Position numbers and translations under genes: made by a program. Shown one piece after another: positions 13,162-59,036 of a stretch of DNA of 64,000 bases. Every line of letters begins with the position of its first letter. Position 1 is the first letter of the stretch. The stretch spans positions 1-64,000 of IMG/VR virus record IMGVR_UViG_3300036770_007547; one strand, written 5' to 3'. The notes under the pieces are model-generated. The model had not been told where the DNA came from. It did no database searches and was given only the letters and a program-made list of their open reading frames with translations.

Positions 13162-13348
13162 ATTCAACCTCGCTTTGATTGGATTGTCTGGGCACCTGTG
13201 CCGTGGACTCCAGCCATCGGATGATGGAGTGCTGATTGTAGCAATCAATCGGCACCGAGTTCACTGCCACTGACGCACGCTGACTGTGATTTACCGCACA
13301 GCCCGATGCCAAAAGGGATATCGCACACAAAAGGAAAATCCTGTTCAT
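13088..13348 (-). CDS. small lipoprotein
   Basis: Lipobox LASGC; ATG 6 nt after -10 box. Confidence 0.7.
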   Translation of the reverse strand: MNRIFLLCAISLLASGCAVNHSQRASVAVNSVPIDCYNQHSIIRWLESTAQVPRQSNQSEVEYAQLQSQIKARIWSIRYACQPVMR

Positions 13349-13354
13349 GCACAC

Positions 13355-13385
13355 ATAGTACACGAACAGGATTTATTGGTCAACC
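13355..13385 (-). promoter_or_regulatory. early promoter cassette, copy 5 (leaderless)
   Basis: GGTTGACC-N17-TACTAT-N6-ATG. Confidence 0.8.
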
Positions 13386-13393
13386 AGTCCAGA

Positions 13394-13675
13394 TTACTCG
13401 GATTTGGCTGCGGGTTTGGACATGTAGGCCTTCATGATGCCTTCGCCGAACTTGTTGTAGTCAAATTTGGCAGCATCTTGCACATGCTTGATGGTCTCAC
13501 TCATCACTGTGGTAGTGGCATCAACAGTGGCCTTGGCTGCACGCTTGGTGTAGTCGGTCTGGCTGTCAATGAACTCGTTGAGTGCATCAGCGATCTTCGC
13601 ATCAACAACGAAGGTCTTGACGAATTGCTTTTTGGTGTTTTGTACTTGGTCGATCACGGTGTCTACTGCAAACAT
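13394..13675 (-). CDS. phasin-like amphipathic helical protein
   Basis: 93 aa, Ala/Thr/Lys-rich and helical; AAAGGAGA RBS; PhaR-box-like site upstream. Confidence 0.55.
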   Translation of the reverse strand: MFAVDTVIDQVQNTKKQFVKTFVVDAKIADALNEFIDSQTDYTKRAAKATVDATTTVMSETIKHVQDAAKFDYNKFGEGIMKAYMSKPAAKSE

Positions 13676-13736
13676 GGTGTTTCTCCTTTGATTAAGCGAG
13701 CTTGGTTGTTGGACCCGCCCCATGCGGCATCCAACT
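13676..13736 (-). promoter_or_regulatory. ROSE-like structured 5' leader
   Basis: Hairpin GTTGGA...TCCAAC then CTCGCTTAATCAAAGGAGA (UCGCU can pair with SD). Confidence 0.55.
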
Positions 13737-13764
13737 GCACTTCATGATTATATATGATACTTAT

Positions 13765-13776
13765 TGCACTGCACAA
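13765..13776. promoter_or_regulatory. PhaR-box-like site
   Basis: TGCACTGCACAA fits TGCRNYGCASMA (consensus recalled). Confidence 0.5.
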
Positions 13777-13820
13777 GATTTTATCTGCCCAGATAATGAA
13801 TTTTGGATGACATCCAAACG

Positions 13821-15289: not shown

Positions 15290-15378
15290 GTTCGTCCCCT
15301 AAATTTTGCATCTATTTATTTTTATGCAATGCAAAAAAAATTATTTCATAAATAGCTGCACTATAGGAGATACTCAAC

Positions 15379-15708: not shown

Positions 15709-15979
15709 TCAGGCCCACTGAATCGATGCCGGCCAACAGCATGTAGTTGGCCAGCATCCCAAAACTTTGCCGGGTCCAAGCGGCCCAGGCATAGATCGCA
15801 CAACCCAAAATAAAGAACGGATATATCAATATCAGCGGAGGGTTGGGCACGGTGGCCGCCATCCACAAACTGCAACCGATACTCAAGGCCCAGGCCAATG
15901 CTTCTAGCACGAATCTCAATGGATAACTGCGGAAGTCTTGTTTGATCCATGCAAACGTGGGTCGCAACAAATCTATCAC
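15689..15979 (-). CDS. small multi-TM membrane protein
   Basis: Three hydrophobic helices; GTGA coupling to uvsE. Confidence 0.7.
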   Translation of the reverse strand: MIDLLRPTFAWIKQDFRSYPLRFVLEALAWALSIGCSLWMAATVPNPPLILIYPFFILGCAIYAWAAWTRQSFGMLANYMLLAGIDSVGLTRMIFS

Positions 15980-17001
15980 AACACATACTCCCGAGCAAAC
16001 GAATGGCTGGCTAGGTTCTTGCCTTTGCTTTCGCACATGATGTCAAACTCTGTGGAAAAAGTGGCTGCCCACTCATTGACTGCACGATTCCAGTAGAAAT
16101 CGCTGTGTGCTCGAAGTTTGCCTTTCTTGTAGCCCCGGGCCAACAGATCAGTCAAGTCCGGAGCAACATCTACATCGTGCCCGACCAGTATGTCCTCACG
16201 GCTGACACTGTAATGTATGACCGGGCGACGCAGACCACGCCAACTGTCACGAACTTTTTTGACACGGTCATCCTGGGCACTGATGTATTCCCCGGTCTTG
16301 ATCCAGTGGTGATGTATGTCTAACACCAGAGCGAGATGGTCTGCCAGTTCGAGGCTGGCGTCGAGTCCCCAGGACATTTCGTCGTTTTCGATGGTGATAC
16401 AATTTCGCGCCTCTGGTGAGAGACGCCCAAGTGTGTGGATGATACCGGCTGGACCTTTTCGACCCGAGATGTGGACGTTGATTTTAAAGTCCTGGAAGGT
16501 ACGTCCATAACCCATCCAGCGGGCCATATCTGCATGATATTCAAACTCCTCTATGCTTCTATTTACGATGTCTTCGCTTTCGCTGGCCAGAACACAGAAC
16601 TGTCCGGGATGGAAGCTGAGCCTTACACCCAAGCGACGAGCAGCTTCGCCGATGGGCGCAAATATACGCTCGCAATGGTCCTGGATCTCCCGGCGCTGCC
16701 ACCACTCGCGCCAGCTGGGCTCGGTGTAGCCCTGCAACATCTCTGAACCCAGGCGTACCATCCGCAGTTCCGGCTCCAGAGCGCCCACGGTCTCGACCAT
16801 GCGCAAGGCCGCAGCGGCATTGTGGTTCATGATGTCCCACTGGCGTTGTTCGGCTTCCTCGGGGTGCTCGCGCAGCCAGCGCATGGTGGTTGATCTACCA
16901 TTGAGTTCACGGTTGGAGGCATTCACTTTCATGCCCCCGCATTCCGAGGGATCAGTGAGCCATTTGCATGCGAAACCGATGCGAGAGTGTGTAGTAGTCA
17001 T
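15976..17001 (-). CDS. uvsE: UV damage endonuclease
   Basis: RIGFAC, RLSFHPGQF, TIENDE, VLDIHHH, RAHSD, MCESKGKNLA. Confidence 0.95.
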   Translation of the reverse strand: MTTTHSRIGFACKWLTDPSECGGMKVNASNRELNGRSTTMRWLREHPEEAEQRQWDIMNHNAAAALRMVETVGALEPELRMVRLGSEMLQGYTEPSWREWWQRREIQDHCERIFAPIGEAARRLGVRLSFHPGQFCVLASESEDIVNRSIEEFEYHADMARWMGYGRTFQDFKINVHISGRKGPAGIIHTLGRLSPEARNCITIENDEMSWGLDASLELADHLALVLDIHHHWIKTGEYISAQDDRVKKVRDSWRGLRRPVIHYSVSREDILVGHDVDVAPDLTDLLARGYKKGKLRAHSDFYWNRAVNEWAATFSTEFDIMCESKGKNLASHSFAREYVL

Positions 17002-17046
17002 ACCAGTATTGTAACACGGGCATGATTATGTTGCAACAGCAAACGG

Positions 17047-17391: not shown

Positions 17392-17392
17392 T

Positions 17393-23343: not shown

Positions 23344-23369
23344 GTGTTTGACCTTTTAAATATGTACCT

Positions 23370-24161
23370 ATGCAATTTGCCTTTGATCTAATTTCAGACC
23401 TACATGTGGACAGCTGGCGCCAGAGCCTGGACTGGGAACACCAAGCCACGAGTCCTGTGTGCATTATAGCAGGAAATGTCACGGGAGATCAAGCCGAGCT
23501 ACACCGTACACTCACCGACATATCCAAATGCTACAAAGCCACTATCTACATCGACGGCGAAGGCGAGCACATCAACGATTGCAGCGACATCGGCCGCAAC
23601 TATCACGACATAGATCGGTTGTGCCAATCCATAAACAATCTCGTGTATCTACAGGACAACTGTGTGATCATGAACGGGGTGGCGGTGATCGGAACCAATG
23701 GTTGGTGGACCTGGGACTTTGATCCCGACATCGATGTCGATCAAGCTCAGGCCTGGTTTTGTCATACCACGCATCATCACACCAACGTCACTGAAGTGAT
23801 ATCCAATCTGGCCAACAGCGAGGCCAAGTATCTCTCCAGCTCGGTGTTGAAACTGCAAAGACATCCCGAGGTGCGCAAGATCGTGGTGGTCACGAATTGT
23901 GTGCCCTATCATTGCTTGATCGAACACGACCAAGACCTACGATCGAAATATGATGTGGGAGTGATCGGCAACAAATGGATGCGGCAGGTGATTGGCAACG
24001 ATCTCGAGAGCAAGATCAGTCATTGGTGCGTGGGACGATATCCTGGCATGTTTGACAAGGTCATCGATGGTGTGAGATTTGTCAGCAACCCCCGAGGACA
24101 TGCACAAGCATCGTGGAACCAAACAGTTTATTTTCCACGACGCTTTGAGATTGATATCTAG
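23370..24161 (+). CDS. metallophosphoesterase-like protein with degenerate motifs
   Basis: SDLH retained; AGN for GD; DGEGEH for GNHE; SNPRG. Confidence 0.75.
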   Translation: MQFAFDLISDLHVDSWRQSLDWEHQATSPVCIIAGNVTGDQAELHRTLTDISKCYKATIYIDGEGEHINDCSDIGRNYHDIDRLCQSINNLVYLQDNCVIMNGVAVIGTNGWWTWDFDPDIDVDQAQAWFCHTTHHHTNVTEVISNLANSEAKYLSSSVLKLQRHPEVRKIVVVTNCVPYHCLIEHDQDLRSKYDVGVIGNKWMRQVIGNDLESKISHWCVGRYPGMFDKVIDGVRFVSNPRGHAQASWNQTVYFPRRFEIDI

Positions 24162-25273: not shown

Positions 25274-25495
25274 CTAGTACATTCTTGGGGGCAGTTGCTG
25301 ACCTTTGATGTAACGCTCCCAGCGTTTTTTGGCCAGGCTTTTGGCGGTCTTGCGACGTGTGGTGGGTTTGACGTAGGTCTCTCGCTCGCGTAGATCCATG
25401 AGCAGACCCGAATTCTGTATCTTCTTCTTGAACTTGCGCAGAGCCTTTTCGACGTTGCCGTCGGTGACTATAACACTTCTTCCATGTAGAGCCAT
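25274..25495 (-). CDS. rpsU: ribosomal protein bS21
   Basis: NVEKALRKFKKK...RERETYVKPT. Confidence 0.92.
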   Translation of the reverse strand: MALHGRSVIVTDGNVEKALRKFKKKIQNSGLLMDLRERETYVKPTTRRKTAKSLAKKRWERYIKGQQLPPRMY

Positions 25496-25505
25496 GATTC
25501 TCCTT

Positions 25506-26702
25506 TTACAATGATGATGGGGTATTTACCAACTCGGTGTCGATATCTACACACTTTATTCCTCGATCGTGATAGTCGCGCAGATGATACATGTGCGGCA
25601 TCAACACTCGCTCGAGCTCGCTGTGCAAGGCACGAGCTCCGGTGCCCGAACCACGAGATCGATCCACCAAGGCTTCCAGCGCCGGCCTTGACAAGTTGAG
25701 ATCCACCCCATCTTGCTGGAAGATCCAACGATACTGATCCACTAGATTGTTGCGCACGTCAGTGAGTATGCGCATCATGTCTTCGCGATCCAAGAGATCG
25801 AGATTTATCACTGTGGGAAATCTTCCCACGAACTCGGGTATCATGCCAAACTTGACCAGGTCGTCGGGTGTCACTGCACTGAGAGACACCGACTTTTTCT
25901 CGGGCAAAGGATTCTGGAATCCCATGCTTGAGCCAATCAATCGACGTTGTATGATGCTTTCCAGCCCCACGAAGGCTCCACCGGCTATGAACAGTATGTT
26001 GGTGGTGTCGATCTCTAGATTCTCTCCGTTGGGATGTTTGCGTCCGGGCTGTGTGGGAACTCGGCATTCGGTGCCCTCTACCAGTTTCAGCAAGGCCTGT
26101 TGCACGCCTTCGCCACTCACGTCTCGGGTGATCGAAGAGCTTTCGCTTTTTCGAGCGATCTTGTCGATCTCGTCCACGAACACGATTCCTCGTTCGGCAC
26201 GTTCGATGTTGTAGTCAGCAGCCGCATACAATCTACTGATCAGACTTTCCACGTCATCGCCCACATATCCGGCTTCGGTGATGGAAGTGGCATCGGCGAT
26301 CACAAAAGGCACATCCAGATACCGAGCCACAGTGCGTGCCAACAGAGTTTTTCCCGAGCCCGTGGGACCCAGCATGAGTATGTTGGCTTTTTGTATTTCC
26401 GGCGATGACTTGTCGCGATTGATACGCTTGTAGTGATTGATCACGCTCACGGCCAACACTATCTTGGCACTGTCTTGACCGATCACATAGTCGTCCAAGA
26501 ACGTCTTGAGCTGTCTGGGATCATGGTTTCTTTGTTCAACCGAATCGTGTGCTTCGGAAGCTTCGGGGTCGGTCAGTAGTTCCTGGCACAATGACACACA
26601 TTCATTGCAGATGGCCGAATTTTCACTGACTATGAGTTTTTGTACTGCGTCCTTGTGCTTGCCGCAGAATGCACAAGAATCAAGTGCTTGCTGTTCTTTC
26701 AC
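25506..26702 (-). CDS. clpX: Clp protease ATPase subunit ClpX
   Basis: C4 zinc domain, GPTGSGKT, DEIDK, RDVSGEGVQQ, RKH, MGF loop, TGARAL. Confidence 0.97.
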   Translation of the reverse strand: MKEQQALDSCAFCGKHKDAVQKLIVSENSAICNECVSLCQELLTDPEASEAHDSVEQRNHDPRQLKTFLDDYVIGQDSAKIVLAVSVINHYKRINRDKSSPEIQKANILMLGPTGSGKTLLARTVARYLDVPFVIADATSITEAGYVGDDVESLISRLYAAADYNIERAERGIVFVDEIDKIARKSESSSITRDVSGEGVQQALLKLVEGTECRVPTQPGRKHPNGENLEIDTTNILFIAGGAFVGLESIIQRRLIGSSMGFQNPLPEKKSVSLSAVTPDDLVKFGMIPEFVGRFPTVINLDLLDREDMMRILTDVRNNLVDQYRWIFQQDGVDLNLSRPALEALVDRSRGSGTGARALHSELERVLMPHMYHLRDYHDRGIKCVDIDTELVNTPSSL

Positions 26703-28327
26703 TGATTCTCCTGATCAAGCCTTTTTTCTATCTGTTGACGTTCGGCATCGGTGAGCAATTCGGGGTCGTATTCACCGGTACTGATCTTGTTGATGAGATG
26801 TTCGATGTAGGCATTGTTGTAACTATAGCTGTCTGTTTGTGATTTGTCAACTTCGATCCATTTCGTACCGTTGAATTTGTAGAGCAAACTCGGCATCTGA
26901 TCGATGCGCACATACATGTCGCCCTTGACGGGGGTTTCGGGCCAAGCTGGACCAAATCCAACATCGCGACGTATGCGTGGATCGTCGAGATATTCCATCC
27001 AGCCTGGCTCGGGTATGCGACCCATGATCACCAGGCGTCGTTGCTCTTTGAGAGTTTTTCCGGGATTGTCGTTTTTCCAAAGATGTTGTGCTTGCTTGAT
27101 CACTGGATCTTCGCTGACCGGATCTTCTTCGGCGATGAAATCAGGCACTGGCGCCAACTCTTGTTGTAGCTGTGCCATGTGTTCGTCGCTCAACGATGCA
27201 GCCTCCGTGGACTCGGTGGGTTTGCTCCAATCGATGTCGGGATTCTGATAAAAGTATTTGCCATTTTCAGGCATCGCTGTGTGTGCTGGTTGTTTTGGCA
27301 CATAAGGTTCGGGTTCTTCGTCCGACACGTCATCCAGCACTTGATAGTCCACTAGACGTGGGGCCACATCTTCTCGAGATTGGTCTCGGGTATCTTGATC
27401 GACCACGGGTGTAGCGTCCAATTCATGAGATCCTTGGTCATCATGTACGGCATCCACATCCAAATCTTTGTCAACACTGGTATCATTAGCGGGTGCATCT
27501 GGAGTCTCCGGTTCGGTAACGATGGCTGCTTTTCTTTCCCGGTGCCATTTCAGGCTTTCGGTGGCGGCCAGCAACATCATGATGGCCAGTGGATCAAACA
27601 CTGCCACCAATAATACAATCATCCATCTCACTGCACGTTCCAGGAGATTCTCATCGGGATTGTCGCCGTAAAGCAAAGCGGCCACATAACGTATGGGACC
27701 GACTTCGGCCTCGATCTTTCTCAGATCTCGTGCCATGGGCGCTTTCTCTTCCTGGAGTTTTACTATGCGAGCCTGTGCGGCTTCGATGGTGCGAGTGAGA
27801 TTGTCTCGGTCTCGGGCCTGGCTGCGGCGCACAGCAAGAGCACGCTCAGCCGAACTTTGGGTATAGGTGCTTCCATCTCGACGAGTTATCTCTCGATCAT
27901 TGCCGGCCGATTGGATTCCGATCACTGCGTCATCCAATTGCTTGATCAGCGATCGTGCGTTTTCGATGGTGTCTCGCTCGTTTTTTATTTTCTCATCTAT
28001 CAGCGCGACCTGTGCGGCCACATCACCGGTGGGCACAGCTTGATCTAGGTGTGCTTTTGACAAAAATCCAAAAATTCCCATGCTGGTGATCAGCATGAGT
28101 GCTGCCACTGCGGGCACCAAATACAACTTCATGGCCAACTTGCACTGGCCCCAATGTTCGTGCAGCCAAACCGTGACCACCAGTTTGGCAGCTTCCAGCA
28201 CACCACCCATGATGATGATGGGCAACACCGAGGCCGAAAATATAGCCGTCAAGCCCACTATGCTGTAAAATGCGGCGATGACGCTCAAGGCCAGCGCCAC
28301 CAAGAACATGAGTGCAGTCAGGATCAT
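26699..28327 (-). CDS. membrane protein with long coiled coil and acidic linker
   Basis: Three N-terminal TMs, coiled coil, fourth TM; TAAATA 5 nt before ATG. Confidence 0.8.
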   Translation of the reverse strand: MILTALMFLVALALSVIAAFYSIVGLTAIFSASVLPIIIMGGVLEAAKLVVTVWLHEHWGQCKLAMKLYLVPAVAALMLITSMGIFGFLSKAHLDQAVPTGDVAAQVALIDEKIKNERDTIENARSLIKQLDDAVIGIQSAGNDREITRRDGSTYTQSSAERALAVRRSQARDRDNLTRTIEAAQARIVKLQEEKAPMARDLRKIEAEVGPIRYVAALLYGDNPDENLLERAVRWMIVLLVAVFDPLAIMMLLAATESLKWHRERKAAIVTEPETPDAPANDTSVDKDLDVDAVHDDQGSHELDATPVVDQDTRDQSREDVAPRLVDYQVLDDVSDEEPEPYVPKQPAHTAMPENGKYFYQNPDIDWSKPTESTEAASLSDEHMAQLQQELAPVPDFIAEEDPVSEDPVIKQAQHLWKNDNPGKTLKEQRRLVIMGRIPEPGWMEYLDDPRIRRDVGFGPAWPETPVKGDMYVRIDQMPSLLYKFNGTKWIEVDKSQTDSYSYNNAYIEHLINKISTGEYDPELLTDAERQQIEKRLDQENQ

Positions 28328-28331: not shown

Positions 28332-28613
28332 TTATTTATCGCTTCTTGGGTGGTTATCACTGCTTACAATAACCGCTAGCTTGGTGGCCACCCAAGTGGC
28401 CCAGCGCTCATCGGGCACGTCGAACCATACCGGTATCACCCCATGATTGTGAACGAGTTTGCGGCGCACTCGGGGCTGTGTGTGCCACTGGCTGCCGAAC
28501 CAATCCCGGCACTCGCGCATCACAGCATACCACTGTTCGATGGTATGTACCCACACATAGAATCGGTGCAGATCCGGGGTCGTTTTTTTAAGTGAGCTAG
28601 ATTCCATCGACAT
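28332..28613 (-). CDS. Trp-rich hypothetical protein
   Basis: ORF directly downstream of the structured RNA; start uncertain. Confidence 0.65.
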   Translation of the reverse strand: MSMESSSLKKTTPDLHRFYVWVHTIEQWYAVMRECRDWFGSQWHTQPRVRRKLVHNHGVIPVWFDVPDERWATWVATKLAVIVSSDNHPRSDK

Positions 28614-45419: not shown

Positions 45420-45839
45420 TTAGCTGGTAACAAGTTCGAACACTGTGTTGGCCGATTCCAGCACAGCGATGCGCGAAGGCAATTCTTGAAGTTCGTCGAG
45501 CCCAACGATCATGGGCACGCCTTCGGCATCCTGATGTAGATAGTAGAGTGGTTCGGTGTCATGGCCCAGAGTGGCCAGGTCTGTGACATCAAATTCAAAA
45601 TCCCACCATCCATCGCGATGACAAGGCACAGAGATGTTTTCAGGCAAGCATCTCAGGCTTATGATTTGATTGATGGTGTCCCAGTTGCGCTGTTGATTGC
45701 GAGCACGCTGCCAGGCAGCTTCATCATTGATTTTTTCGCCGGAGCGTGTTGTAAACGGTAGTTGTGCATGCTTGACCGGGCCACGCACTCCAGTCGCCGT
45801 TATATCAAACTGCGTCCGGCATCTCACACGATGCATCAT
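45420..45839 (-). CDS. hypothetical phage protein
   Basis: TQFDITATG, RNQQRNWDT; TAAATA upstream. Confidence 0.75.
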   Translation of the reverse strand: MMHRVRCRTQFDITATGVRGPVKHAQLPFTTRSGEKINDEAAWQRARNQQRNWDTINQIISLRCLPENISVPCHRDGWWDFEFDVTDLATLGHDTEPLYYLHQDAEGVPMIVGLDELQELPSRIAVLESANTVFELVTS

Positions 45840-45857
45840 AGTCGCGTTATTTAACGG

Positions 45858-48630: not shown

Positions 48631-49716
48631 TTATTGATTCTCGGGCGCCAAATAAACTGCCTTTATTAACGCACCACCGGTGTCGCGTATTTCCTGTGGC
48701 CAGCTTTCGACCATGTCCCAGCAACGATCGCGAACATGGTCAGACATGAGCAGGTCACGATTGGCCAGCAGTCGCGGCATCATGCTTGATCTCAGCTGGG
48801 CCGCACGCTCTCGATCCCGCAACAGATCTAGATTGGATTTCACGGCCCACCAACAGCGTTCAAACAGCGTGTCACGATACTGATAGCTGTGATCTATCAC
48901 ATCATCAAAGATGTCAAATCCCAGTTTCTCCCATTCAGCGGCTTGACCATAACCACCCACCCATATAGGAAGCGTGAGCCCCATCACGGAGAACGCGGTT
49001 TTTTCTGTGAATACTGCACCTCGATCATAGGCCACCGATTCGGTGATGAGAGATATCGCAGATTTTTCAAAAATGTCATGCAGGCCATTCACCCAACTCC
49101 AGGTATTGCCACCATAGTATTTCCAGCTGAGCGGGTCATCTTTGTCTTTGTCGGGATTTTCCGGGGGCATTTCGCCGGTGTATTCGATCCAACGCTGGGG
49201 CAATTCCACTGGTGCCAACAAAAATCCCCGCTGTCGTTGTGTCATCATGTCTTGCCAATCCAATGACTCCAGTTCTTGTATGATGGTGCTCATGTCGTAG
49301 CCACGGAACTTGCCGCTGTACGAATATGTGCAGTCCAGATCAAACATTTCCTGCAGTTTGAGCATGAGATAACGATTCACTTGCTTTTTGTTGATCATGA
49401 AATTGCAGGCGTATTCGGTCGTGACCGAATCGATCAAAGGGATGCGATCTTGTCGGAACATGCGTATCTGCTGTACCAACCAAGCCGGACAGGTATACAC
49501 AGGAGGACCACCTGGCCACTCAATGGCGCTCCAGAGATCGTTGACCACGTAACCAGCTCGCCCACGCTGGGGCCAGAATCGATCCAGGGCCGCGGTCTGG
49601 AACGCATCATAGACATGGAAAACATCGTTGCTGTCTATCACATCTACATCATGCAATGTTTCGTGGGGAATAGATGTTTCCCAACCTATGAATGTGGTGA
49701 TGAGTCTAAGTGTCAT
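48631..49716 (-). CDS. GT10-like glycosyltransferase, paralog 2
   Basis: ITES...FTEKT...PIWVGG...GFDIFDDVIDHSY. Confidence 0.6.
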   Translation of the reverse strand: MTLRLITTFIGWETSIPHETLHDVDVIDSNDVFHVYDAFQTAALDRFWPQRGRAGYVVNDLWSAIEWPGGPPVYTCPAWLVQQIRMFRQDRIPLIDSVTTEYACNFMINKKQVNRYLMLKLQEMFDLDCTYSYSGKFRGYDMSTIIQELESLDWQDMMTQRQRGFLLAPVELPQRWIEYTGEMPPENPDKDKDDPLSWKYYGGNTWSWVNGLHDIFEKSAISLITESVAYDRGAVFTEKTAFSVMGLTLPIWVGGYGQAAEWEKLGFDIFDDVIDHSYQYRDTLFERCWWAVKSNLDLLRDRERAAQLRSSMMPRLLANRDLLMSDHVRDRCWDMVESWPQEIRDTGGALIKAVYLAPENQ

Positions 49717-49739
49717 AATGTTTGTATTTATTGACAGTG

Positions 49740-51153: not shown

Positions 51154-52212
51154 TCACTGATAAAGGAATTCTAGGCACCTCTCACCAAATCTCGCTAGAG
51201 CCTGGTTGGTGCGATCTCGATCGAAAAACCACTGTTGATTGTGCCGACATCGGGCATCAATCTCTTCTGGATACTTATATACCGCTTCTGCCAGCTGTCG
51301 CACAGCTTCGGCGGCTGCTTCGGCCCGGCGACGCGTTTTTCGTATACTGTCATAGCCTTCGTCGCAGAAATCATGCCAGGTCTGGAATCCAAGATCTCGC
51401 AATTTCTGCAGGCAGCCTTGATCCCCGAATATCACGAAAGGTCGTGCTTGTGCCAAGGCCTTCCAGGTCTTTTCGGTGAGATAGGGAGTGACTCCATCGA
51501 AGGCCGTGCTTTCCATGACACAGTACACACGGCTCTGTGCAAACATGTCATGATGCGGTAGATGATCCAGGGCCACGTTTTCGTTGCAGTCATAGAACAA
51601 AGGCAGTGCCCGATAGTTTTCAAAACGATCTATGCCCGCTTTGTTGAACCAAACTTCCAGGCCCAGGTCACCGAATCTTAGATTGGTTTCTAAAACATCC
51701 TGGCGATCATCGGTGACCATGCGTAGATCTCGATAGTGTGACAGTATCTCCAGCATCATCTCCCGATGCGGGTGCAAGTTCCCCACTGGGATCACCACAT
51801 CATAGCGGGCCTGGGACACCGAGGTACGATTGACTTCGTTCCACAACACTGCCGACGAGTATCTCTGCTGTGTGATCAAGTCCCAAAAGTCAAAGCCCAG
51901 GCTGCGGTTTCCATTCTCGTGATGCTCGGCATGTTCTTTTCCAGTGATGATCACAGTGTCTCGAGCCTGGTGCAAAGGGAAACAGTGGAAAGCATGACCT
52001 TCAAACACATTGCCCCACTGTTTCCAGGCAGTAGGATCTTGTCCGCGCCAATCTCTAAACACCGGGCCCCCGGGCTGATCAGAAATCGCTAGATCAGCGA
52101 ATCGTTGCTGTCGGCTGTGCATGGCAGCGATGCCGGCATAGATCCAGCTCTGTGTGTAAAGCCCCCAGTCGGGATTCTGTTGTTTGAGATAGGTCAGCGA
52201 CGTCAGTTTCAT
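51154..52212 (-). CDS. GT10-like glycosyltransferase, paralog 3
   Basis: VMES...LTEKTWKA...PFVIFG...GFQTW...DEGYD. Confidence 0.6.
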   Translation of the reverse strand: MKLTSLTYLKQQNPDWGLYTQSWIYAGIAAMHSRQQRFADLAISDQPGGPVFRDWRGQDPTAWKQWGNVFEGHAFHCFPLHQARDTVIITGKEHAEHHENGNRSLGFDFWDLITQQRYSSAVLWNEVNRTSVSQARYDVVIPVGNLHPHREMMLEILSHYRDLRMVTDDRQDVLETNLRFGDLGLEVWFNKAGIDRFENYRALPLFYDCNENVALDHLPHHDMFAQSRVYCVMESTAFDGVTPYLTEKTWKALAQARPFVIFGDQGCLQKLRDLGFQTWHDFCDEGYDSIRKTRRRAEAAAEAVRQLAEAVYKYPEEIDARCRHNQQWFFDRDRTNQALARFGERCLEFLYQ

Positions 52213-53189
52213 TGGCGCATCCATTTTTTGCGCGATATTTCGATGCGTATGCGCGAAGTCTGTCGATGTTGCATGATCATCATCACTGTGGCCAAGCGAC
52301 CCATGACCTTGACAGCATCGTTGACATCTTTGCAACCCTCGGGCCATTCAGGCATGCTCACAGCCCAGCCCAGTTCCAGGGCGCGGTCCACCAACTTCAT
52401 ACCAGCTTCGTCCTGATCGGGAACCACAGTGATCTCGCGCCCCAGGCTGCGTATCAGTCGCGCCTGCGCATCATTGATCTCGGCATGCAACACAGCCAAA
52501 CCAGAAATGCTGAGTGCATCAAACACTCCTTCCATCACGATCGCATGTTGCCAGTCGGGTCGTTGCAGGTCCGTGCCAAACACATAGCCTGACTGCATGT
52601 CATGGATGTAGCGAGGATTGTGATCATCGAAGAATCTGCGAGTGTGTCCCACTATGCGTCCATCATAGGTAAAAGGTATGATCACTCCTTGCCTGCGCCT
52701 AAATTTGTCACCGGGTTCACCAGTGATCATGCCACAGGGGTAATCCTCGGGCACATGCCTGTCGCGGAGATACTGCCAGTGTATGGGCATGTTCTCATCA
52801 ACGAGAGAAAAGTCTGGTGGTAAATCGCGATCTTCAAACTCTATGCCTTGCAAGATGTTGGCTGTGCGTTGACGGTCATCCAGGATACCCATCACGCTTT
52901 TGTGGCGCAGGCTTTCGAGATTGATGCGTTCGATCTCTTCTTGGGGCACGTTCAACCATGTCAGTAGTCGTCGTGCTTTGAAACTGAGATTCCTGCCCAG
53001 GATGAACGACGCAGTGAAGCCACAGTTGAAACAGTGATAGCTCCAACCTTGGTCTGTGGTCTTGACACCGCCGCGCTGACGTCGATCAGCGCTTTCGCCG
53101 TTGTGTACGCAACAGGGTGCGTTGAAGCTCACCCAACCTGATGCTGTGGATTTTTTCTTGCCAACGATGTATGGGAGTAAATCAATCAC
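52209..53189 (-). CDS. DNA primase (gp61-like)
   Basis: Zn finger PCC...HCFNC; TOPRIM EGVFDA, PDQDEAG, KDVND. Confidence 0.93.
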   Translation of the reverse strand: MIDLLPYIVGKKKSTASGWVSFNAPCCVHNGESADRRQRGGVKTTDQGWSYHCFNCGFTASFILGRNLSFKARRLLTWLNVPQEEIERINLESLRHKSVMGILDDRQRTANILQGIEFEDRDLPPDFSLVDENMPIHWQYLRDRHVPEDYPCGMITGEPGDKFRRRQGVIIPFTYDGRIVGHTRRFFDDHNPRYIHDMQSGYVFGTDLQRPDWQHAIVMEGVFDALSISGLAVLHAEINDAQARLIRSLGREITVVPDQDEAGMKLVDRALELGWAVSMPEWPEGCKDVNDAVKVMGRLATVMMIMQHRQTSRIRIEISRKKWMRQ

Positions 53190-53929
53190 TTGGATAGTGT
53201 AGCATGATCGATCTCTTTGATCAATAGATCACGGATAAGTTGGTGACCTTTTTCATTGGGATGGCCATTTTTGCACCACAGTCCCCGTTTGCCATTGCTG
53301 TTTTCTGGATGTCGGAAAAAGTCGGTCATGAGATCACGATCGTTCCATATCATGGTGTCTAGATCGATCGACGATCTTTGCGGAGAAACGCGAAATTGCA
53401 ACATAGGAATATTGTTGCGAGCCGCCACACCATCAAACAAAAGCACGGTTTGTAGATAGTTCAGTCTTGCTTGTTCGGTTCCCGTGGCCATGGTCAAGTA
53501 TCTTTTGTTGAGTTCTTTCCAATCACGGGGTACCACGTCGTCGGATGCTTCGGTCCAGGCCGAATGTATGAACTTGTTCCAGGGCGGATCATCGGGGTAG
53601 GATCTATGGGCATGATTGTACCAGCTCATGCGATCGGGTTCGGTGTGTGCTGCCAACACCAGGCACTGCGAGGGATCTGATTCGTGTTCCAACCACCACA
53701 AAAACGTCCAAATCTCGCTCTGCAGGCTGCCGCCGGGTATGCCAAAATTTTCCACCGGGACCTGATAGTGTTTTCCCAACAGGCCCAGGAAACAGTGATT
53801 GTTGCGATAGTGGTCGTTTTCAGACCAACAAGAATGTGCTGCGGGTTGTGTTTTTCGCAGTTCGGGATCCAGTAGTTCATCGCCGTACATCCACGAATCA
53901 CCAAACCCCACTATTTTTGTAAACTTCAT
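53186..53929 (-). CDS. SGNH/GDSL-like protein
   Basis: FGDSWMYG, NFGIPGGS, GHPNEKGH. Confidence 0.7.
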   Translation of the reverse strand: MKFTKIVGFGDSWMYGDELLDPELRKTQPAAHSCWSENDHYRNNHCFLGLLGKHYQVPVENFGIPGGSLQSEIWTFLWWLEHESDPSQCLVLAAHTEPDRMSWYNHAHRSYPDDPPWNKFIHSAWTEASDDVVPRDWKELNKRYLTMATGTEQARLNYLQTVLLFDGVAARNNIPMLQFRVSPQRSSIDLDTMIWNDRDLMTDFFRHPENSNGKRGLWCKNGHPNEKGHQLIRDLLIKEIDHATLSK

Positions 53930-54702: not shown

Positions 54703-54723
54703 AGGGATCTCCAACTGATATTT

Positions 54724-56350: not shown

Positions 56351-56768
56351 ATTCTCGCAGTTCTCGGGCATCGATCATGGAAGCAAGAGTCTCGATGTCA
56401 TTGATCTTCCAGGCCGGGAACAAGTTCATCAATCTTTTTTTGACATCGTTGGCCGACTTCTTGTCGTCGCGACCTCGCAGCTTGATGTACTGATGATCAA
56501 ACGCTCCCAGGCCGGGACTCACTGCCGTGGCCGACAACCATTGCAGTTTTGGATGTCGATTTATGGCAAAAAAGTTTCGATTGAGATGATAGTTGGTGCT
56601 TTGTACATAGTACTCCTGCATGTCTTGGCTGGCAGAAACTGTGCTGCCCCAGCGTATCATTAGATAGTTGGAGAATCGCTTGCGTTCTTCGTCGGTGAGT
56701 TCGTCGTAGAATCCGCGATTCTTGCGATCCAACTGCGTCATCTCGTTGCGTATGTGTAGTTTATCCAT
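56322..56768 (-). CDS. clamp-loader small subunit (gp62)-like protein
   Basis: FSNYLMIRW..S, N, HPKLQW pattern; replication-cluster context. Confidence 0.5.
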   Translation of the reverse strand: MDKLHIRNEMTQLDRKNRGFYDELTDEERKRFSNYLMIRWGSTVSASQDMQEYYVQSTNYHLNRNFFAINRHPKLQWLSATAVSPGLGAFDHQYIKLRGRDDKKSANDVKKRLMNLFPAWKINDIETLASMIDARELREYERDHGAND

Positions 56769-56979
56769 TGCGGCGACTCATGCTGTTGATGACCCGGGCA
56801 TGCGCATCCAACTGTCGATGCACCCGGCGCAGATCTTTCTGCAAGGCTTCGATCGTGGCTCGCTGGCTTTCCACGATGTCTTGCAATCTCCGCAAGTCTT
56901 GATCATGCTTGCTGGCATCTAGTTTGGGGTTTGATTTTGCTGTGGGTTCCACTGTGGTGGATGATTGGTATTGTGTCAT
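56761..56979 (-). CDS. small coiled-coil protein
   Basis: Heptad pattern; within operon. Confidence 0.65.
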   Translation of the reverse strand: MTQYQSSTTVEPTAKSNPKLDASKHDQDLRRLQDIVESQRATIEALQKDLRRVHRQLDAHARVINSMSRRNG

Positions 56980-56981
56980 GT

Positions 56982-57482
56982 CTACCAGGCCTTGCTGTAG
57001 TCAACGATCTCGCAGTTGCGTGATATGTCCCGAACGAAATACACACACTCGGGCTCGGGATCGTCGTTGATAGGCACTGCCAAGATTTGACCGTTCTTGA
57101 GCTTGGGCGCATACCATGTCACTTCGTGATAGATGTCCACGATCTCGATGTCAGGGAAACTGGGCCGGAAACTTGACAATGGATTGAATTGGAAGGCCTT
57201 GAATCCTCGGTCATTGATCGATGTCAAAGGCAGCATTTCTAGATCTCCGAGATCGGGTTCTCCTATCAAGATCTGCCAATCCACGGGCATGCTCACGATG
57301 TCTTGATTGATCCTCAACACCAGTGCCGGAGCATTGAAGCTCTCCAAGAAGATCAAAGGAATGTAGTGATAGTCGGGATTGCCGGGATCGCTGTTGTCCA
57401 GGATGGCAAATCTCATGTCATCGATCTTGTCCGGCAGTGTGTCGAGGTCATAAGCGATGTTGTCTAGGGTCAGTATCTTCAT
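56982..57482 (-). CDS. hypothetical all-beta phage protein
   Basis: Start MKILTL, 7 nt after TTGACA-N17-TACAAT. Confidence 0.8.
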   Translation of the reverse strand: MKILTLDNIAYDLDTLPDKIDDMRFAILDNSDPGNPDYHYIPLIFLESFNAPALVLRINQDIVSMPVDWQILIGEPDLGDLEMLPLTSINDRGFKAFQFNPLSSFRPSFPDIEIVDIYHEVTWYAPKLKNGQILAVPINDDPEPECVYFVRDISRNCEIVDYSKAW

Positions 57483-57514
57483 TCTAGTTATTGTAGATGG
57501 TGATTGACGAAATG

Positions 57515-58972
57515 TCAATTCCATTCCAACCTTTCTTGTGTGAATGGATATTCGGCTTCACGATAGTAGGCTTTCCTCTTGGTGAGATGTCGTTTCGCAA
57601 ATTTGCATGTACTTGTTATGTCCCAGATCTGCACAAAGTCTTTGTCTTCGGCCTTGCGGATTCCACGTCCGATTGACTGGATGACTCGCACAAAACTCTT
57701 GCCAGGTTCCACCAGCACGAGATTAAAGATCCTGGGGATGTTGATGCCCACAGCGGCCACGCCATAGGTTGCGACAATGATTTTATCTGTTGCCTCCGCC
57801 ACCGAGTCATAATGATCCTGCCTTTCCCCGGCCTTGGTACCGCCGGATATGAATACCGCATTTGTGAGACGTGACACCAGCTCTTGTCCGGCCGCGATAC
57901 GATCCACCAACACCAGAGTGTTGCCAGTTTCGTTGACACGCTGTATGAGTTCGGCCATGGTGTCCAATCTACCAGGTTCTTCTAACAGGTACTTGAGCTC
58001 GCTCTGATAGTTGTTGTACTCCACATGATCCACCAACTGCACCACATTGACATGGCACTGGGCCAACACACCTTGCTCTTGCAGTTCCACTGCGGCCAGT
58101 CGGTTGATGACTGGCCCGATACTGACTTCAAGGGCACGGCTTTCAAACTGTTCTTTGGGTATGGTTCCGGTCAAACCCCACCTGATCGGCACTTGCGACA
58201 TCACGCCCGTGAGCAAGGTCTTGAGCGCATCGGCCTTGGCCATGTGTACCTCGTCCACGATCACACAGATCACACCTTCCAGGAATTCTCCGATGGTGAT
58301 GTCGGCCACTTGGTTGCGTGTGTTTTTTAACAGCACATTGAGGCTCTGCCAAGTGCAGATGGTATGCTGGTGTCCAAACTCTTTCCTGTCACCAAAGAAC
58401 ACGCCCACATCTAACTGCATGTTGCGATAGTCTTTCTCGGTCTGTGTGACAAGACTCTTGTTGGGCACGATCACGATGCTACGACCATGGCGCTCTACTC
58501 GCTGGCTCAGGGCCGCGGTCATGATGGTCTTGCCAGCACCTGTGGCCACCTCTTGCAGGCACTGCGGCGTGGACAAAAACGAGTTGATGATCTTGACTTG
58601 ATAGTCTCTGAGTCGTATGGGCTCACCGGCCGCGGGATGATTGGCGGGCCATGATATGTGAGCGAAGCTGTCTTCGTTGACACTGTCAAATTCAAAAAAG
58701 GTGGGATAATCTCGACGATCATCGAGCTCGATATCGTAGTCAAGGCTTTCCAATATTGGAAGTATCTCCGGCAAGAGATTGACATAGGTGCTACCGCCCA
58801 TCTGGAAATAGCTGACCTTGCCGTCCCAACGGCCCAGTCTCACAGCCGGGAGATATCGAGCATAAGGCACATCGTATTTGAACTGGTTGACCAGTCGTCG
58901 ACGTGCGTCGAGATCCAGTCCTTCGATTTTGACGTTGACTTCGTCGTGTATGATTAGAGTGGCCTGGCGCAT
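57515..58972 (-). CDS. uvsW: SF2 DNA helicase, UvsW-like
   Basis: LRDYQ, ATGAGKT, DEVH, GLTGT, QSIGRGIR. Confidence 0.9.
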   Translation of the reverse strand: MRQATLIIHDEVNVKIEGLDLDARRRLVNQFKYDVPYARYLPAVRLGRWDGKVSYFQMGGSTYVNLLPEILPILESLDYDIELDDRRDYPTFFEFDSVNEDSFAHISWPANHPAAGEPIRLRDYQVKIINSFLSTPQCLQEVATGAGKTIMTAALSQRVERHGRSIVIVPNKSLVTQTEKDYRNMQLDVGVFFGDRKEFGHQHTICTWQSLNVLLKNTRNQVADITIGEFLEGVICVIVDEVHMAKADALKTLLTGVMSQVPIRWGLTGTIPKEQFESRALEVSIGPVINRLAAVELQEQGVLAQCHVNVVQLVDHVEYNNYQSELKYLLEEPGRLDTMAELIQRVNETGNTLVLVDRIAAGQELVSRLTNAVFISGGTKAGERQDHYDSVAEATDKIIVATYGVAAVGINIPRIFNLVLVEPGKSFVRVIQSIGRGIRKAEDKDFVQIWDITSTCKFAKRHLTKRKAYYREAEYPFTQERLEWN

Positions 58973-59005
58973 GTTGCAAGTATACAGGCTTTATTTACAC
59001 AAGTC

Positions 59006-59036
59006 AAAAAAAGAGGATGATATCTCTATCATCCTC
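59006..59036 (-). terminator. intrinsic terminator
   Basis: GAGGATGATA-GAGA-TATCATCCTC-TTTTTTT. Confidence 0.85.

What the first reader, a model, noticed from the sequence alone, without database searches (positions are those of the whole stretch)
13346..59007. Systematic leaderless genes in a phage that encodes bS21
Seen: five promoters put the start codon 6-7 nt after the -10 box with no SD. They are the lipoprotein (TTGACC-17-TACTAT-6-ATG 13348), uvsE (TTGCAA-17-TACAAT-6-ATG 17001), primase (TTGATC-17-TACACT-6-GTG 53189), the 57482 gene (TTGACA-17-TACAAT-7-ATG) and uvsW (TTGACT-17-TATACT-6-ATG 58972). Several late-type genes have TAAATA-N5-ATG (754, 4156, 28327). Cassette early genes, by contrast, have strong GGAG sites. 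Established: bS21 lies next to the anti-SD and affects initiation. Inference: two translation classes, possibly tuned by phage bS21.
Basis: partly seen in the sequence, partly recalled or inferred. Interest (0 to 1): 0.62.

Follow-up and report, generated by a model that had tools for sequence, protein, structure and literature searches.

The report
Leaderless genes in a jumbo phage
In this uncultured jumbo phage and hundreds of its relatives, about a tenth of the genes have a promoter placed directly against the start codon, so the messenger would have no ribosome-binding leader; the pattern is real and conserved, but it is equally common in relatives that lack the phage's ribosomal protein bS21.

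Summary
All five sigma-70-type promoters lie on the minus strand exactly as described, with the -10 box ending 6-7 nt before the start codon and no Shine-Dalgarno (SD) site.

In related IMG/VR phage contigs this geometry is conserved while the surrounding sequence diverges:
- Primase: 68 of 70 loci.
- 166-aa gene: 66 of 79.
- UvdE: 37 of 76.
- UvsW: 30 of 76.

The "late-type" TAAATA motif is a second and more numerous class. It ends 4-8 nt before the start of 18 genes in this 223-kb record and of 14-34 genes in six near-complete relatives. Those genes include virion and baseplate proteins, and the phage encodes a T4 gp55-like late sigma factor. About half of the assignable TAAATA sites and a quarter of the sigma-70 sites abut a start codon. 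The rest have a 16-45 nt leader with a strong SD.

T4, PA5oct, Atu_ph07 and Phosso show no such enrichment.

The bS21 link is not supported. Three complete relatives without bS21 have as many leaderless-configured genes as four records with it, and bS21's own gene is SD-led. No RNA data could be found, so transcription starts are inferred from promoter geometry, not mapped.

The parts
59013..59036 (-). Intrinsic terminator hairpin (10-bp stem, 4-nt loop). Its T-run overlaps the -35 of the uvsW promoter.
   Evidence: The same hairpin-plus-promoter layout recurs in many relatives.
58979..59007 (-). Sigma-70-type promoter TTGACT-17-TATACT ending 6 nt before the uvsW ATG. A TAAATA lies inside its spacer (58992-58997).
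   Evidence: It is conserved at a 6-7 nt gap in 30 of 76 related loci.
57515..58972 (-). UvsW-like helicase gene, leaderless-configured.
   Evidence: Pfam ResIII/DEAD/Helicase_C, plus a weak UvsW_N match below Pfam's cut-off. The ATG is the first start codon of the ORF, and an SD core is present in only 1 of 76 relatives.
57490..57518 (-). Promoter TTGACA-17-TACAAT (11 of 12 matches) inside the 3' end of uvsW, ending 7 nt before ATG 57482.
   Evidence: The -10 ends 5-9 nt before the ATG in 66 of 79 loci, exactly 6 nt in 57.
56982..57482 (-). 166-aa conserved protein of unknown function (phrog_11279), leaderless-configured.
   Evidence: tblastn aligns from residue 1 in all 79 loci. The PHROG profile is matched from position 1.
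53196..53224 (-). Promoter TTGATC-17-TACACT ending 6 nt before the primase GTG. It lies inside the upstream ORF 53186-53929.
   Evidence: It is conserved in 68 of 70 loci, at exactly 6 nt in 59, with an SD core in 0 of 70.
52209..53189 (-). Toprim primase gene. The GTG start overlaps the upstream stop (GTGA), so leaderless initiation and/or translational coupling may apply.
   Evidence: Among relatives, 27 of 28 GTG starts are overlapped by a long upstream ORF, while 37 of 41 ATG starts are not.
17008..17036 (-). Intergenic promoter TTGCAA-17-TACAAT ending 6 nt before the UvdE ATG.
   Evidence: It is leaderless-configured in 37 of 76 relatives; the others are SD-led or leadered.
15976..17001 (-). 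UV damage endonuclease UvdE gene, leaderless-configured.
   Evidence: Pfam UvdE, E 8e-31. The G001 orthologue starts at the same residue with TTGACT-17-TAAAAT-6-ATG.
13355..13383 (-). Intergenic promoter TTGACC-17-TACTAT ending 6 nt before ATG 13348.
13088..13348 (-). 86-aa putative lipoprotein, leaderless-configured.
   Evidence: The signal peptide with a cysteine lipobox begins at this ATG (read). There is no family hit and no orthologue in G001 or G002, so no comparative test was possible.
28333..28338 (-). Late-type TAAATA ending 5 nt before ATG 28327.
   Evidence: TAAATA ends 4-8 nt before the orthologous ATG in 43 of 57 related loci, and in G001 and G002.
26699..28327 (-). 542-aa protein with a hydrophobic N-terminus. 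It is late leaderless-configured and is the first gene of the array that ends with bS21.
25506..26702 (-). AAA+ ATPase with a ClpX-type N-terminal zinc-finger match, SD-led, lying between the late leaderless gene and bS21.
   Evidence: PHROG hits. The upstream sequence has GGAG before the GTG.
25274..25495 (-). Phage bS21 gene. It is preceded by TAAATA (25523-25528), a 27-nt gap and AAGGAG (25500-25505).
   Evidence: Pfam S21, E 7e-16. The layout is conserved in G001, G008 and G009.
3494..4167 (-). 220-aa gene with TAAATA (4162-4167) ending 5 nt before ATG 4156, which is the first start codon of the ORF.
   Evidence: No orthologue was found in G001 or G002.
404..765 (-). TAAATA (760-765) ending 5 nt before ATG 754. 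The gene and its start are uncertain, because the ORF also has an ATG at 844.
   Evidence: My gene caller did not call it.
45420..45853 (-). 139-aa gene with TAAATA (45848-45853) ending 8 nt before ATG 45839, just downstream of a hairpin plus T-run.
48631..49730 (-). 361-aa gene with TAAATA (49725-49730) ending 8 nt before ATG 49716.
23357..24161 (+). 263-aa plus-strand gene with TAAATA (23357-23362) ending 7 nt before ATG 23370.
   Evidence: The G001 orthologue has TAAATA 6 nt before its ATG.
60158..60186 (-). Example of the SD-led early cassette: TTGACC-17-TATAAT, then a leader of about 30 nt with AAGGAG. Further copies have their -10 ending at 7301, 7608, 7947, 31731, 32335 and 32822.

Best explanation
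The window comes from an uncultured jumbo phage of roughly 340 kb in the T4 superfamily. Its nearest cultured relatives are Phosso, Atu_ph07 and PA5oct. The phage starts translation in two ways.

In one class a promoter lies 16-45 nt or more upstream and the mRNA carries a strong AAGGAG Shine-Dalgarno site.

In the other class the promoter's -10 element ends 4-8 nt before the start codon. Transcription should then begin at or within about 3 nt of the A of ATG, giving an mRNA with no room for an SD. Such an mRNA would be translated by the leaderless (5'-AUG, 70S-type) pathway.

Two promoter types are used this way:
- Host sigma-70 promoters (TTGACx-17-TAnnnT-6-ATG) drive replication and repair genes such as uvsW, primase and uvdE.
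- A TAAATA element drives many late genes, including virion and baseplate proteins. It is most likely read by the phage's gp55-like late sigma factor.

Shown here:
- the sequence geometry;
- its statistical excess;
- its conservation across many relatives;
- the absence of SD;
- the ATG preference;
- the presence of a gp55 homologue.

Inferred: the transcription start positions, the timing of expression and the mode of translation.

The phage bS21 is a late, SD-led gene. Its presence does not track the leaderless class.
For: **1. Excess over chance.**
- 5 fixed-pattern sites against 1.0 expected, and 3 TAAATA-N5-ATG sites against 0.25.
- 60 strong sigma-70-like sites in the 223-kb record against 20.7 +/- 5.1 in simulations.
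- Leaderless-configured genes number 6 (sigma-70) and 18 (late), against 0.3 and 0.0 expected from internal in-frame codons.

**2. Conservation of register while flanks diverge.**
- Primase: 68 of 70 loci (59 at exactly 6 nt), SD core in 0 of 70.
- 166-aa gene: 57 of 79 at exactly 6 nt.
- UvsW: 30 of 76 at 6-7 nt, often straight after a terminator, SD core in 1 of 76.
- UvdE: 37 of 76.
- Late gene: 43 of 57.
- A few relatives have swapped the abutting promoter for a GGAG site, as expected of two alternative solutions.

**3. Bimodal promoter-to-start distances.** There is a sharp peak at 4-7 nt, almost nothing at 10-15 nt, and a hump at 16-35 nt, in three genomes.

**4. Unbiased hexamer ranking.** Among hexamers ending 4-8 nt before starts, only the SD family and TAAATA rank at the top. 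Over seven genomes TAAATA scores 187 against 191 for AAGGAG.

**5. TAAATA behaves as a promoter.**
- A gp55-like sigma factor is encoded (phrog_12791 E 2e-75, phrog_234 E 3e-24).
- The genes it precedes include virion structural and baseplate wedge proteins.
- Unit-first leaderless genes have another TAAATA upstream in 2 of 62 cases, against 74 of 230 for SD-led unit-first genes.
- Its TAA is the upstream gene's stop codon in only about 21 of 187 cases.

**6. AUG dependence.** 233 of 252 leaderless-configured starts are ATG. Primase GTG starts occur almost only where an upstream ORF terminates on them, 27 of 28, against 4 of 41 for ATG starts.

**7. 5' coding ends.** The first 30 nt of leaderless-configured genes are less structured than those of SD-led genes (p = 1e-5).
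Against: - No transcription start site has been mapped. No RNA run holding this sequence was listed, so the 5' ends rest on promoter geometry taken from E. coli sigma-70 and T4 late promoters, which is background knowledge.
- The host is unknown, so its promoter rules and its capacity for leaderless translation are assumed.
- Several of these genes could also be translated from read-through polycistronic RNA by coupling. The primase GTG overlaps the upstream stop. In about half of the relatives uvsW has an ATGA overlap instead of a promoter.
- Gene calls and candidate starts come from my own simple gene finder. Individual late-type cases (754, 54714, 109018) are doubtful.
- TAAATA lacks the first two bases of the T4 consensus.
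- The lipoprotein site has no relatives to test.
Confidence: 0.8

Rival explanations
1. Phage bS21 enters host ribosomes and tunes the balance between the leaderless and the SD-led class, so the leaderless architecture and bS21 belong together.
For: - bS21 is highly conserved in the clade. More than 100 relatives are 73-89% identical, and it is present in 12 of the 16 large records checked, including the window's own.
- It sits at the end of an array headed by a late leaderless-configured gene.
- bS21 contacts the anti-SD, and its absence alters handling of leaderless mRNA (PMC10491246).
- Late expression of phage bS21 has been reported in unrelated phages (PMC9723584).
Against: - Three complete or 99%-complete relatives lack bS21, yet have 8/14, 10/32 and 12/34 leaderless-configured genes. 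bS21-positive near-complete genomes have 9/31, 8/26 and 12/32.
- uvsW is leaderless-configured in bS21-less G002.
- bS21's own mRNA is SD-led.
- The published direction of effect is that loss of bS21 favours leaderless mRNA, so supplying bS21 should favour the SD class.
- No other translation factor (IF3, S1) was found.
Confidence: 0.12
2. The abutting promoters are real but contribute little. These genes would be made mainly from longer polycistronic transcripts, by termination-reinitiation coupling or by SD-independent internal initiation.
For: - Primase GTGA overlaps the upstream stop here and in 27 relatives.
- About 40 of 76 uvsW loci have an ATGA overlap and no promoter.
- Most genes lie on one strand in long arrays.
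Against: - A promoter that only fed downstream genes would not need its -10 held exactly 6 nt from one start codon across 60-80 diverged loci.
- A strong terminator sits immediately upstream of the uvsW promoter.
- 53 of 62 unit-first late leaderless genes have no other recognisable promoter within 150 nt.
- Where no upstream ORF overlaps, the start is ATG.
Confidence: 0.1
3. TAAATA just upstream of the start is not a promoter. It would be an A/U-rich, SD-independent ribosome-binding or enhancer element on a leadered mRNA.
For: - It occupies the same position as an SD, 4-8 nt before the start, and is mutually exclusive with SD.
- It lacks the first TA of the T4 late consensus.
- No transcription start data exist.
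Against: - The same hexamer occurs 16-45 nt upstream of SD-led genes, including bS21.
- It is present once per transcription unit: 2 of 62 against 74 of 230.
- It sometimes follows a terminator directly.
- The phage encodes a gp55-like sigma factor.
- The hexamer is rare genome-wide, 77 copies in 445 kb of both strands.
Confidence: 0.06
4. The pattern is a chance resemblance, or the start codons are mis-assigned.
For: Loose TTGNNN-N16-18-TANNNT matches are no more frequent than chance genome-wide: 269 against roughly 300 from my own base-composition estimate. A few individual sites (39802, 5304, 754) may well be chance.
Against: Shuffle tests, internal-codon controls, alignments from residue 1 and conservation in hundreds of loci all argue against it.
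Confidence: 0.02

Closest known systems
Leaderless genes with the -10 box adjacent to the ORF, as in Deinococcus-Thermus, and the leaderless middle and late transcripts of Thermus phage phiYS40
   Same: A -10 element lies a few nt before the start codon with no SD, and this is used as a regular mode of expression (PMC12340547, abstract seen). From my memory of Sevostyanova et al. 2007, whole temporal classes of phiYS40 mRNAs are leaderless. That paper is listed in the reference list seen but could not be read.
   Different: In those systems the host itself uses leaderless mRNAs widely. Here the host is unknown but looks proteobacterial, going by the tmRNA tag style and bS21 similarity. Half of the cases use a T4-type late motif read by a gp55-like factor. 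A strong-SD class coexists with the leaderless class.
T4 late transcription (gp55 sigma factor, TATAAATA promoter)
   Same: A gp55 homologue is encoded. There is a TAAATA core motif without a recognisable -35, and it precedes virion and baseplate genes.
   Different: T4 shows no excess of TAAATA-N4-7-ATG (16 against 19 for N10-13). Nor do PA5oct, Atu_ph07 or Phosso, while relative G001 has 34 against 8. The first two bases of the T4 octamer are not conserved here. gp33 and clamp dependence were not tested.
Lambda cI mRNA from the pRM promoter
   Same: A phage gene is transcribed from a sigma-70 promoter so that the mRNA begins with AUG. Its translation is sensitive to the uS2 and bS21 content of the ribosome (PMC10491246).
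   Different: That is a single regulatory gene of a temperate phage. Here there are dozens of genes per genome in a lytic-type jumbo phage, including structural genes.
Jumbo phages with mapped transcription starts (phiKZ, AR9)
   Same: They are large phages with distinct early and late promoter classes.
   Different: phiKZ has no leaderless transcript among 65 start sites (PMC8244752). AR9 leaders are 26-491 nt long (PMC5312081). Both use their own RNA polymerases.
bS21-encoding freshwater phages of Bacteroidetes (Chen et al. 2022)
   Same: They are phages of about 300 kb that carry bS21, with bS21 linked to late expression.
   Different: Those genomes have 31-34% GC, predicted hosts without SD usage, and bS21 on the opposite strand inside the TerL/capsid module. 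This record has 51% GC and strong SD sites, and its bS21 is co-directional behind a ClpX-like ATPase. It is a different clade.

Membership tests
Leaderless mRNA genes | The transcript's 5' end lies at, or within a few nt of, the start codon. | not testable with these tools
   No RNA run holding the sequence was listed. The 5' end is inferred only from the 4-8 nt promoter-to-start gap.
Leaderless mRNA genes | There is no Shine-Dalgarno site upstream of the start. | tested here: met
   An SD core within -20..-4 occurs in 1 of 76 (uvsW), 5 of 79 (166-aa gene) and 0 of 70 (primase) loci. No SD-led alternative start lies near the window's cases.
Leaderless mRNA genes | There is a strong preference for AUG as the 5'-terminal start codon. 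| tested here: met
   233 of 252 starts are ATG. Primase GTG is found almost only with an overlapping upstream ORF, 27 of 28. The window's own primase start is such a GTG.
Sigma-70-type promoter | A -35 TTGACA-like and a -10 TATAAT-like hexamer are separated by 17 +/- 1 bp. | tested here: met
   8 to 11 of 12 matches at the five sites. Hexamers and spacing are conserved in relatives while spacer sequences vary.
Sigma-70-type promoter | Host RNA polymerase initiates at the site. | not testable with these tools
   This needs in vitro transcription or start-site mapping.
T4-type late promoter system | The phage encodes a gp55-like late sigma factor. | tested here: met
   G000:155338-156165(-) matches phrog_12791 at E 2e-75 and phrog_234 at E 3e-24. 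Homologues are also present in G001 and G002.
T4-type late promoter system | The -10 element is TATAAATA. | tested here: inconclusive
   The core TAAATA is invariant. The preceding base is A, G or T, and the T4 'TA' prefix is not conserved.
T4-type late promoter system | It drives virion (late) genes. | tested here: met
   Genes preceded by TAAATA include virion structural proteins (phrog_11591, phrog_13484) and a baseplate wedge subunit (phrog_43). Timing itself was not measured.
T4-type late promoter system | It depends on a gp33 co-activator and the sliding clamp. | not tested
   No search was made for gp33 or gp45 homologues.
Ribosomal protein bS21 (PF01165) | The protein matches the family profile over the curated cut-off at canonical length. 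| tested here: met
   58-59 bits against a cut-off of 27, 73 aa. The best matches among solved ribosome bS21 chains have E about 5e-9.
Ribosomal protein bS21 (PF01165) | The protein is incorporated into host 30S subunits. | not testable with these tools
bS21 phage clades a-e of Chen et al. 2022 | GC of 31-34%, bS21 on the reverse strand within the TerL/portal/capsid module, and Bacteroidetes-like bS21. | tested here: not met
   GC is 51%. bS21 is co-directional behind an AAA+ ATPase. Similarity to the Flavobacterium bS21 chain (7jil, E 1e-4) is weaker than to the other ribosome bS21 chains (E about 5e-9).

The most novel reading that the evidence does not exclude
A widespread uncultured clade of T4-superfamily jumbo phages has fused about half of its gp55-type late promoters, and a quarter of its sigma-70 promoters, directly to start codons. 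If so, the phage depends on efficient leaderless (70S-type) initiation in a probably proteobacterial host where that pathway is normally minor. It would then actively shift host ribosomes towards leaderless mRNAs late in infection, using a factor still to be identified. bS21 would be at most an accessory.
Probability: 0.2. Interest if true: 0.85.

Novelty: new variant of a known kind. Interest (0 to 1): 0.66.

Why it matters
Leaderless mRNAs are usually seen as a host-lineage trait (actinobacteria, Deinococcus-Thermus, archaea) or as isolated phage curiosities such as lambda cI. Here a whole clade of environmental jumbo phages, more than 600 matching stretches in IMG/VR, keeps two clean initiation classes side by side. 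It also places a T4-type late promoter directly on the start codon of structural genes, which T4 and the nearest cultured relatives do not do.

If the 5' ends are confirmed, three things follow:
- It is a natural system for asking how leaderless and SD-led mRNAs compete on the same ribosomes during infection.
- It gives a rule for correcting start codons and predicting promoters in these genomes.
- It removes one attractive explanation for why phages carry bS21, and shows how to test what remains of it.

Tried and rejected
- **RNA evidence.** The look-up of sequencing runs listed no RNA run for 53100-59050.
- **Near-identical cultured phage.** megablast of 10 kb against INPHARED found nothing.
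- **Host from bS21.** The nearest cellular or MAG hits are 45-59% identical and taxonomically scattered, and the two best are short contigs that are probably mis-binned phage. No host call was made from this.
- **Pfam Sigma70_r2** gave no hit in three genomes. The gp55 homologue was found only through the PHROG profiles.
- **Single-protein search for relatives of the 542-aa late gene** found 7 loci. An alignment query was needed.
- **Loose promoter pattern.** Any TTGNNN-N16-18-TANNNT is at chance frequency and gives only a weak distance peak. Scoring the hexamers was necessary.
- **Doubtful sites.**
  - 5304 is better explained by the adjacent SD-led cassette.
  - The TTG at 54714 is probably not the start, because orthologues use an SD-led ATG four codons downstream.
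  - 109018 is SD-led in orthologues.
  - 39802 is an unverified pattern match inside a weakly scoring ORF.
- **A at position +4.** Enrichment is clear only for the sigma-70 class (65% against 45%) and is not significant over all leaderless-configured genes (p = 0.10).
- **phiYS40 paper.** It could not be opened, so what I say of it is from memory.
- **IF3 and S1 homologues** are absent.

Full report
**What the window is.** The window is the first 64 kb of a 222,775-bp IMG/VR virus record, which CheckV estimates to be 64% complete. GC is 51% and most genes lie on the minus strand. No near-identical cultured phage exists in the INPHARED collection. By UvsW similarity the nearest cultured relatives are Sinorhizobium phage Phosso (53.5%), Agrobacterium phage Atu_ph07 (51%), Pseudomonas phage PA5oct (48.6%) and the GAP32-type Cronobacter and Escherichia jumbo phages (about 48%). 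IMG/VR holds more than 600 stretches encoding a UvsW relative, the best 80 of which are 75-86% identical. Several of these contigs are complete or near-complete genomes of 316-353 kb. This is therefore a large uncultured clade of T4-superfamily jumbo phages.

**The observation.** All five sites are on the minus strand exactly as written. The gene names hold: UvdE, a Toprim primase, a UvsW-like helicase and bS21. The fixed pattern (-35 TTG, 17-bp spacer, TAnnnT, 6 nt, RTG) occurs five times in the window, all on the coding strand. Shuffles give 1.0 +/- 0.95, and none of 100 reaches five. The fifth reader site has a 7-nt gap. The extra match at 39802 is unverified. In the whole record there are 60 well-scoring sigma-70-like promoters, against 20.7 +/- 5.1 in first-order Markov simulations. 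They fall into two groups:
- A repeated cassette of TTGACC-17/18-TATAAT, a leader of about 30 nt and AAGGAG.
- Promoters whose -10 ends 5-7 nt before a start codon.

A 10-bp terminator hairpin with a T-run overlaps the -35 of the uvsW promoter. There are therefore only about 30 nt between the end of the previous transcript and the uvsW ATG, and none of them forms an SD.

**Comparative test of the sigma-70 class.** I fetched related loci for four of the five genes and asked where the best promoter lies relative to the homologous start codon.

| Gene | Loci with the abutting promoter | Detail | SD core |
|---|---|---|---|
| Primase | 68 of 70 (gap 5-7 nt) | 59 at exactly 6 nt | 0 of 70 |
| 166-aa gene | 66 of 79 (gap 5-9 nt) | 57 at exactly 6 nt; alignments start at residue 1 in all 79 loci | 5 of 79 |
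| UvdE | 37 of 76 | others SD-led or with a longer leader | 9 loci with an SD-preceded candidate start (one of them also has the abutting promoter) |
| UvsW | 30 of 76 (gap 6-7 nt) | many directly behind a terminator; about 40 others overlap the upstream stop as ATGA | 1 of 76 |

Spacer and discriminator sequences differ freely between loci, while the hexamers and the register to the ATG are kept. A few distant relatives carry a GGAG site instead of the abutting promoter. These are the signatures of selection on the distance between promoter and start codon. That distance only matters if transcription starts at the codon.

One further detail fits leaderless initiation, which needs a 5' AUG. 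Among primase loci, 27 of 28 GTG starts are overlapped by a long upstream ORF that stops on them, whereas 37 of 41 ATG starts are not. The window's primase is of the GTG-plus-overlap kind, so it may be made largely by coupling. The lipoprotein has no relatives in the genomes compared. Its case rests on the intergenic promoter and on the signal peptide beginning at that ATG.

**The late-type class is larger.** TAAATA occurs only 77 times in both strands of the record. Yet 19 copies end 4-8 nt before a candidate start codon of a called gene, against about one per offset elsewhere and almost none before internal in-frame codons.

The same sharp peak, an empty zone at 10-15 nt and a broad hump at 16-35 nt appear in two complete relatives. 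I ranked all hexamers that end 4-8 nt before candidate starts in seven genomes. The list is headed by the SD family and by TAAATA alone, 187 genes against 191 for AAGGAG. The TAA of the motif is the upstream gene's stop in only about 21 of 187 cases, so this is not a gene-junction artefact.

For the 542-aa gene at 28327, TAAATA ends 4-8 nt before the orthologous ATG in 43 of 57 related loci that are only 48-65% identical. Several other late cases are conserved in G001 and G002.

**Why TAAATA is a promoter.**
- The record and its relatives encode a T4 gp55-like late sigma factor.
- Genes behind the motif include two virion structural proteins and a baseplate wedge subunit.
- The motif also occurs 16-45 nt upstream of SD-led genes. 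bS21 is one of them, and there the layout (TAAATA, about 27 nt, AAGGAG, start) is conserved in three relatives.
- Some copies follow a terminator directly.
- Among genes that begin a transcription unit, those with an abutting TAAATA have a second TAAATA within 150 nt in only 2 of 62 cases, against 74 of 230 for SD-led ones. There is thus one copy per unit, placed either far from the start or directly against it.

From background knowledge of T4, the late octamer ends about 5-6 nt before the start site. A gap of 4-8 nt would then give a 5' UTR of roughly 0-3 nt.

**How much of the genome, and how specific to this clade.** In this record 6 sigma-70 and 18 late genes are leaderless-configured, about 11% of 217 called genes. 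The expectation from internal codons is 0.3 and 0.0. About half of the assignable TAAATA sites and a quarter of the sigma-70 sites abut a start.

The feature is not general to the T4 superfamily:

| Genome | TAAATA-N4-7-ATG | TAAATA-N10-13-ATG |
|---|---|---|
| Relative G001 | 34 | 8 |
| T4 | 16 | 19 |
| PA5oct | 39 | 43 |
| Atu_ph07 | 36 | 25 |
| Phosso | 8 | 4 |

In Atu_ph07 and Phosso, uvsW and the 166-aa homologue lack an abutting promoter, with a leader or a weak SD-like site instead. In PA5oct the 166-aa homologue is leadered, but uvsW has TAAATA 9 nt before its ATG. Published start-site maps of other jumbo phages show no leaderless transcripts in phiKZ and leaders of 26-491 nt in AR9. 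I found no paper in the searchable library that links leaderless mRNAs to the T4-type late motif.

**bS21.** The gene is a canonical-length bS21. It is strongly conserved within the clade and far from any cellular sequence found. Its best matches among solved ribosome bS21 chains are modest (E about 5e-9), and its match to the Flavobacterium chain is weaker. It differs from the Bacteroidetes-phage clades of Chen et al. in GC content, gene context and SD usage.

Its carriage does not track the leaderless class:

| Genome | bS21 | Sigma-70 / late leaderless-configured genes |
|---|---|---|
| G002 (complete) | absent | 8 / 14 |
| G006 (complete) | absent | 10 / 32 |
| G007 (99%) | absent | 12 / 34 |
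| G001 | present | 9 / 31 |
| G008 | present | 8 / 26 |
| G009 | present | 12 / 32 |
| This partial record | present | 6 / 18 |

The sample is small and not phylogenetically controlled. It does show that the architecture exists without phage bS21.

The literature I could read says that E. coli ribosomes lacking uS2 and bS21 favour the leaderless lambda cI mRNA. A supply of bS21 would therefore be expected to sustain the SD class, to which bS21's own mRNA belongs. No IF3 or S1 homologue was found.

**Host.** The host is unknown. The phage and five of the six fully fetched relatives carry a tmRNA whose tag ends in a pattern that, from memory, is typical of beta- and gammaproteobacteria. Promoters and SD sites are of the standard bacterial type. 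If the host is such a proteobacterium, leaderless mRNAs are a small minority there: 55 of 2,187 start sites in P. aeruginosa. That would make the phage's heavy use more notable. This step is inference.

**Limits.**
- No transcription start is mapped, because no RNA run was listed.
- Gene calls come from a simple home-made finder.
- Some individual sites are doubtful (see the tried-and-rejected field).
- Supporting features are modest. The 5' coding ends are less structured (p = 1e-5), and A at +4 reaches 65% in the sigma-70 class only.

**Verdict.** The leaderless and two-class reading is well supported by comparative evidence. The bS21 link is not supported. This is a new variant of a known kind: leaderless expression driven by both sigma-70 and T4-type late promoters, on a clade-wide scale.

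Noticed in passing
G000:C1:215689-216081 (-), outside the window; also in G001, G006, G007, G008, G009: The phage encodes a tmRNA with tag ANDEVFALAA (variants ANDEQFALAA and ANDELYALAA in relatives). It lies between two late leaderless-configured genes. From memory, the tag style suggests a beta- or gammaproteobacterial host.
   Followed up: partly
window 25506-26702 (-): An AAA+ ATPase with a ClpX-type zinc-finger N-terminus sits immediately upstream of bS21 and downstream of the late leaderless 542-aa gene. The 542-aa gene and bS21 lie in the same order and at similar spacing in G001; the ATPase itself was not checked there.
   Followed up: partly
window 58992-58997 (-): A TAAATA lies inside the 17-bp spacer of the uvsW sigma-70 promoter, 19 nt before the ATG. 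It is also present in the closest relatives (L004-L007, L063). It could be a second, late start giving a leader of about 13 nt without SD.
   Followed up: no
window 5323, 7301, 7608, 7947, 31731, 32335, 32822, 60158 (coordinate of the last base of each -10, minus strand): There is a repeated early promoter-leader cassette: TTGACC-17/18-TATAAT, a conserved leader of about 30 nt containing CAGTAAACAACAAGGAGC-like sequence, then a small ORF. At least eight copies lie in the window and more lie outside it.
   Followed up: partly
L002-L081, upstream of uvsW: In about half of the relatives uvsW has no promoter of its own. Its ATG overlaps the stop of the upstream gene (ATGA), again without SD. The gene therefore alternates between two SD-independent solutions.
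   Followed up: partly
G001 (relative), whole genome: ARAGORN reports 33 genes (tRNAs plus one tmRNA), including one with a CTA anticodon, labelled Pyl or suppressor-like. G002 has only 3 tRNAs. No stop-codon recoding was examined.
   Followed up: no
window 39800-39837 (-): A fifth exact match to the sigma-70-N6-ATG pattern opens a 61-aa frame inside a weakly scoring 142-aa ORF (39617-40045). It may be a small leaderless gene or chance.
   Followed up: no
window 8932-10209, 20453-21694; G000:216061-217113, 220246-221133: The genome carries auxiliary genes: radical-SAM proteins, a UDP-glucose dehydrogenase and a PstS-like phosphate-binding protein. The last two listed loci are late leaderless-configured.
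   Followed up: no
L121, L122 (MAG contigs labelled Chitinophagales and Polynucleobacter): The best 'cellular' bS21 matches (52-59% identity over the full length) lie on short 5-11 kb contigs of metagenome bins from one study. They are probably phage contigs binned with bacteria.
   Followed up: no
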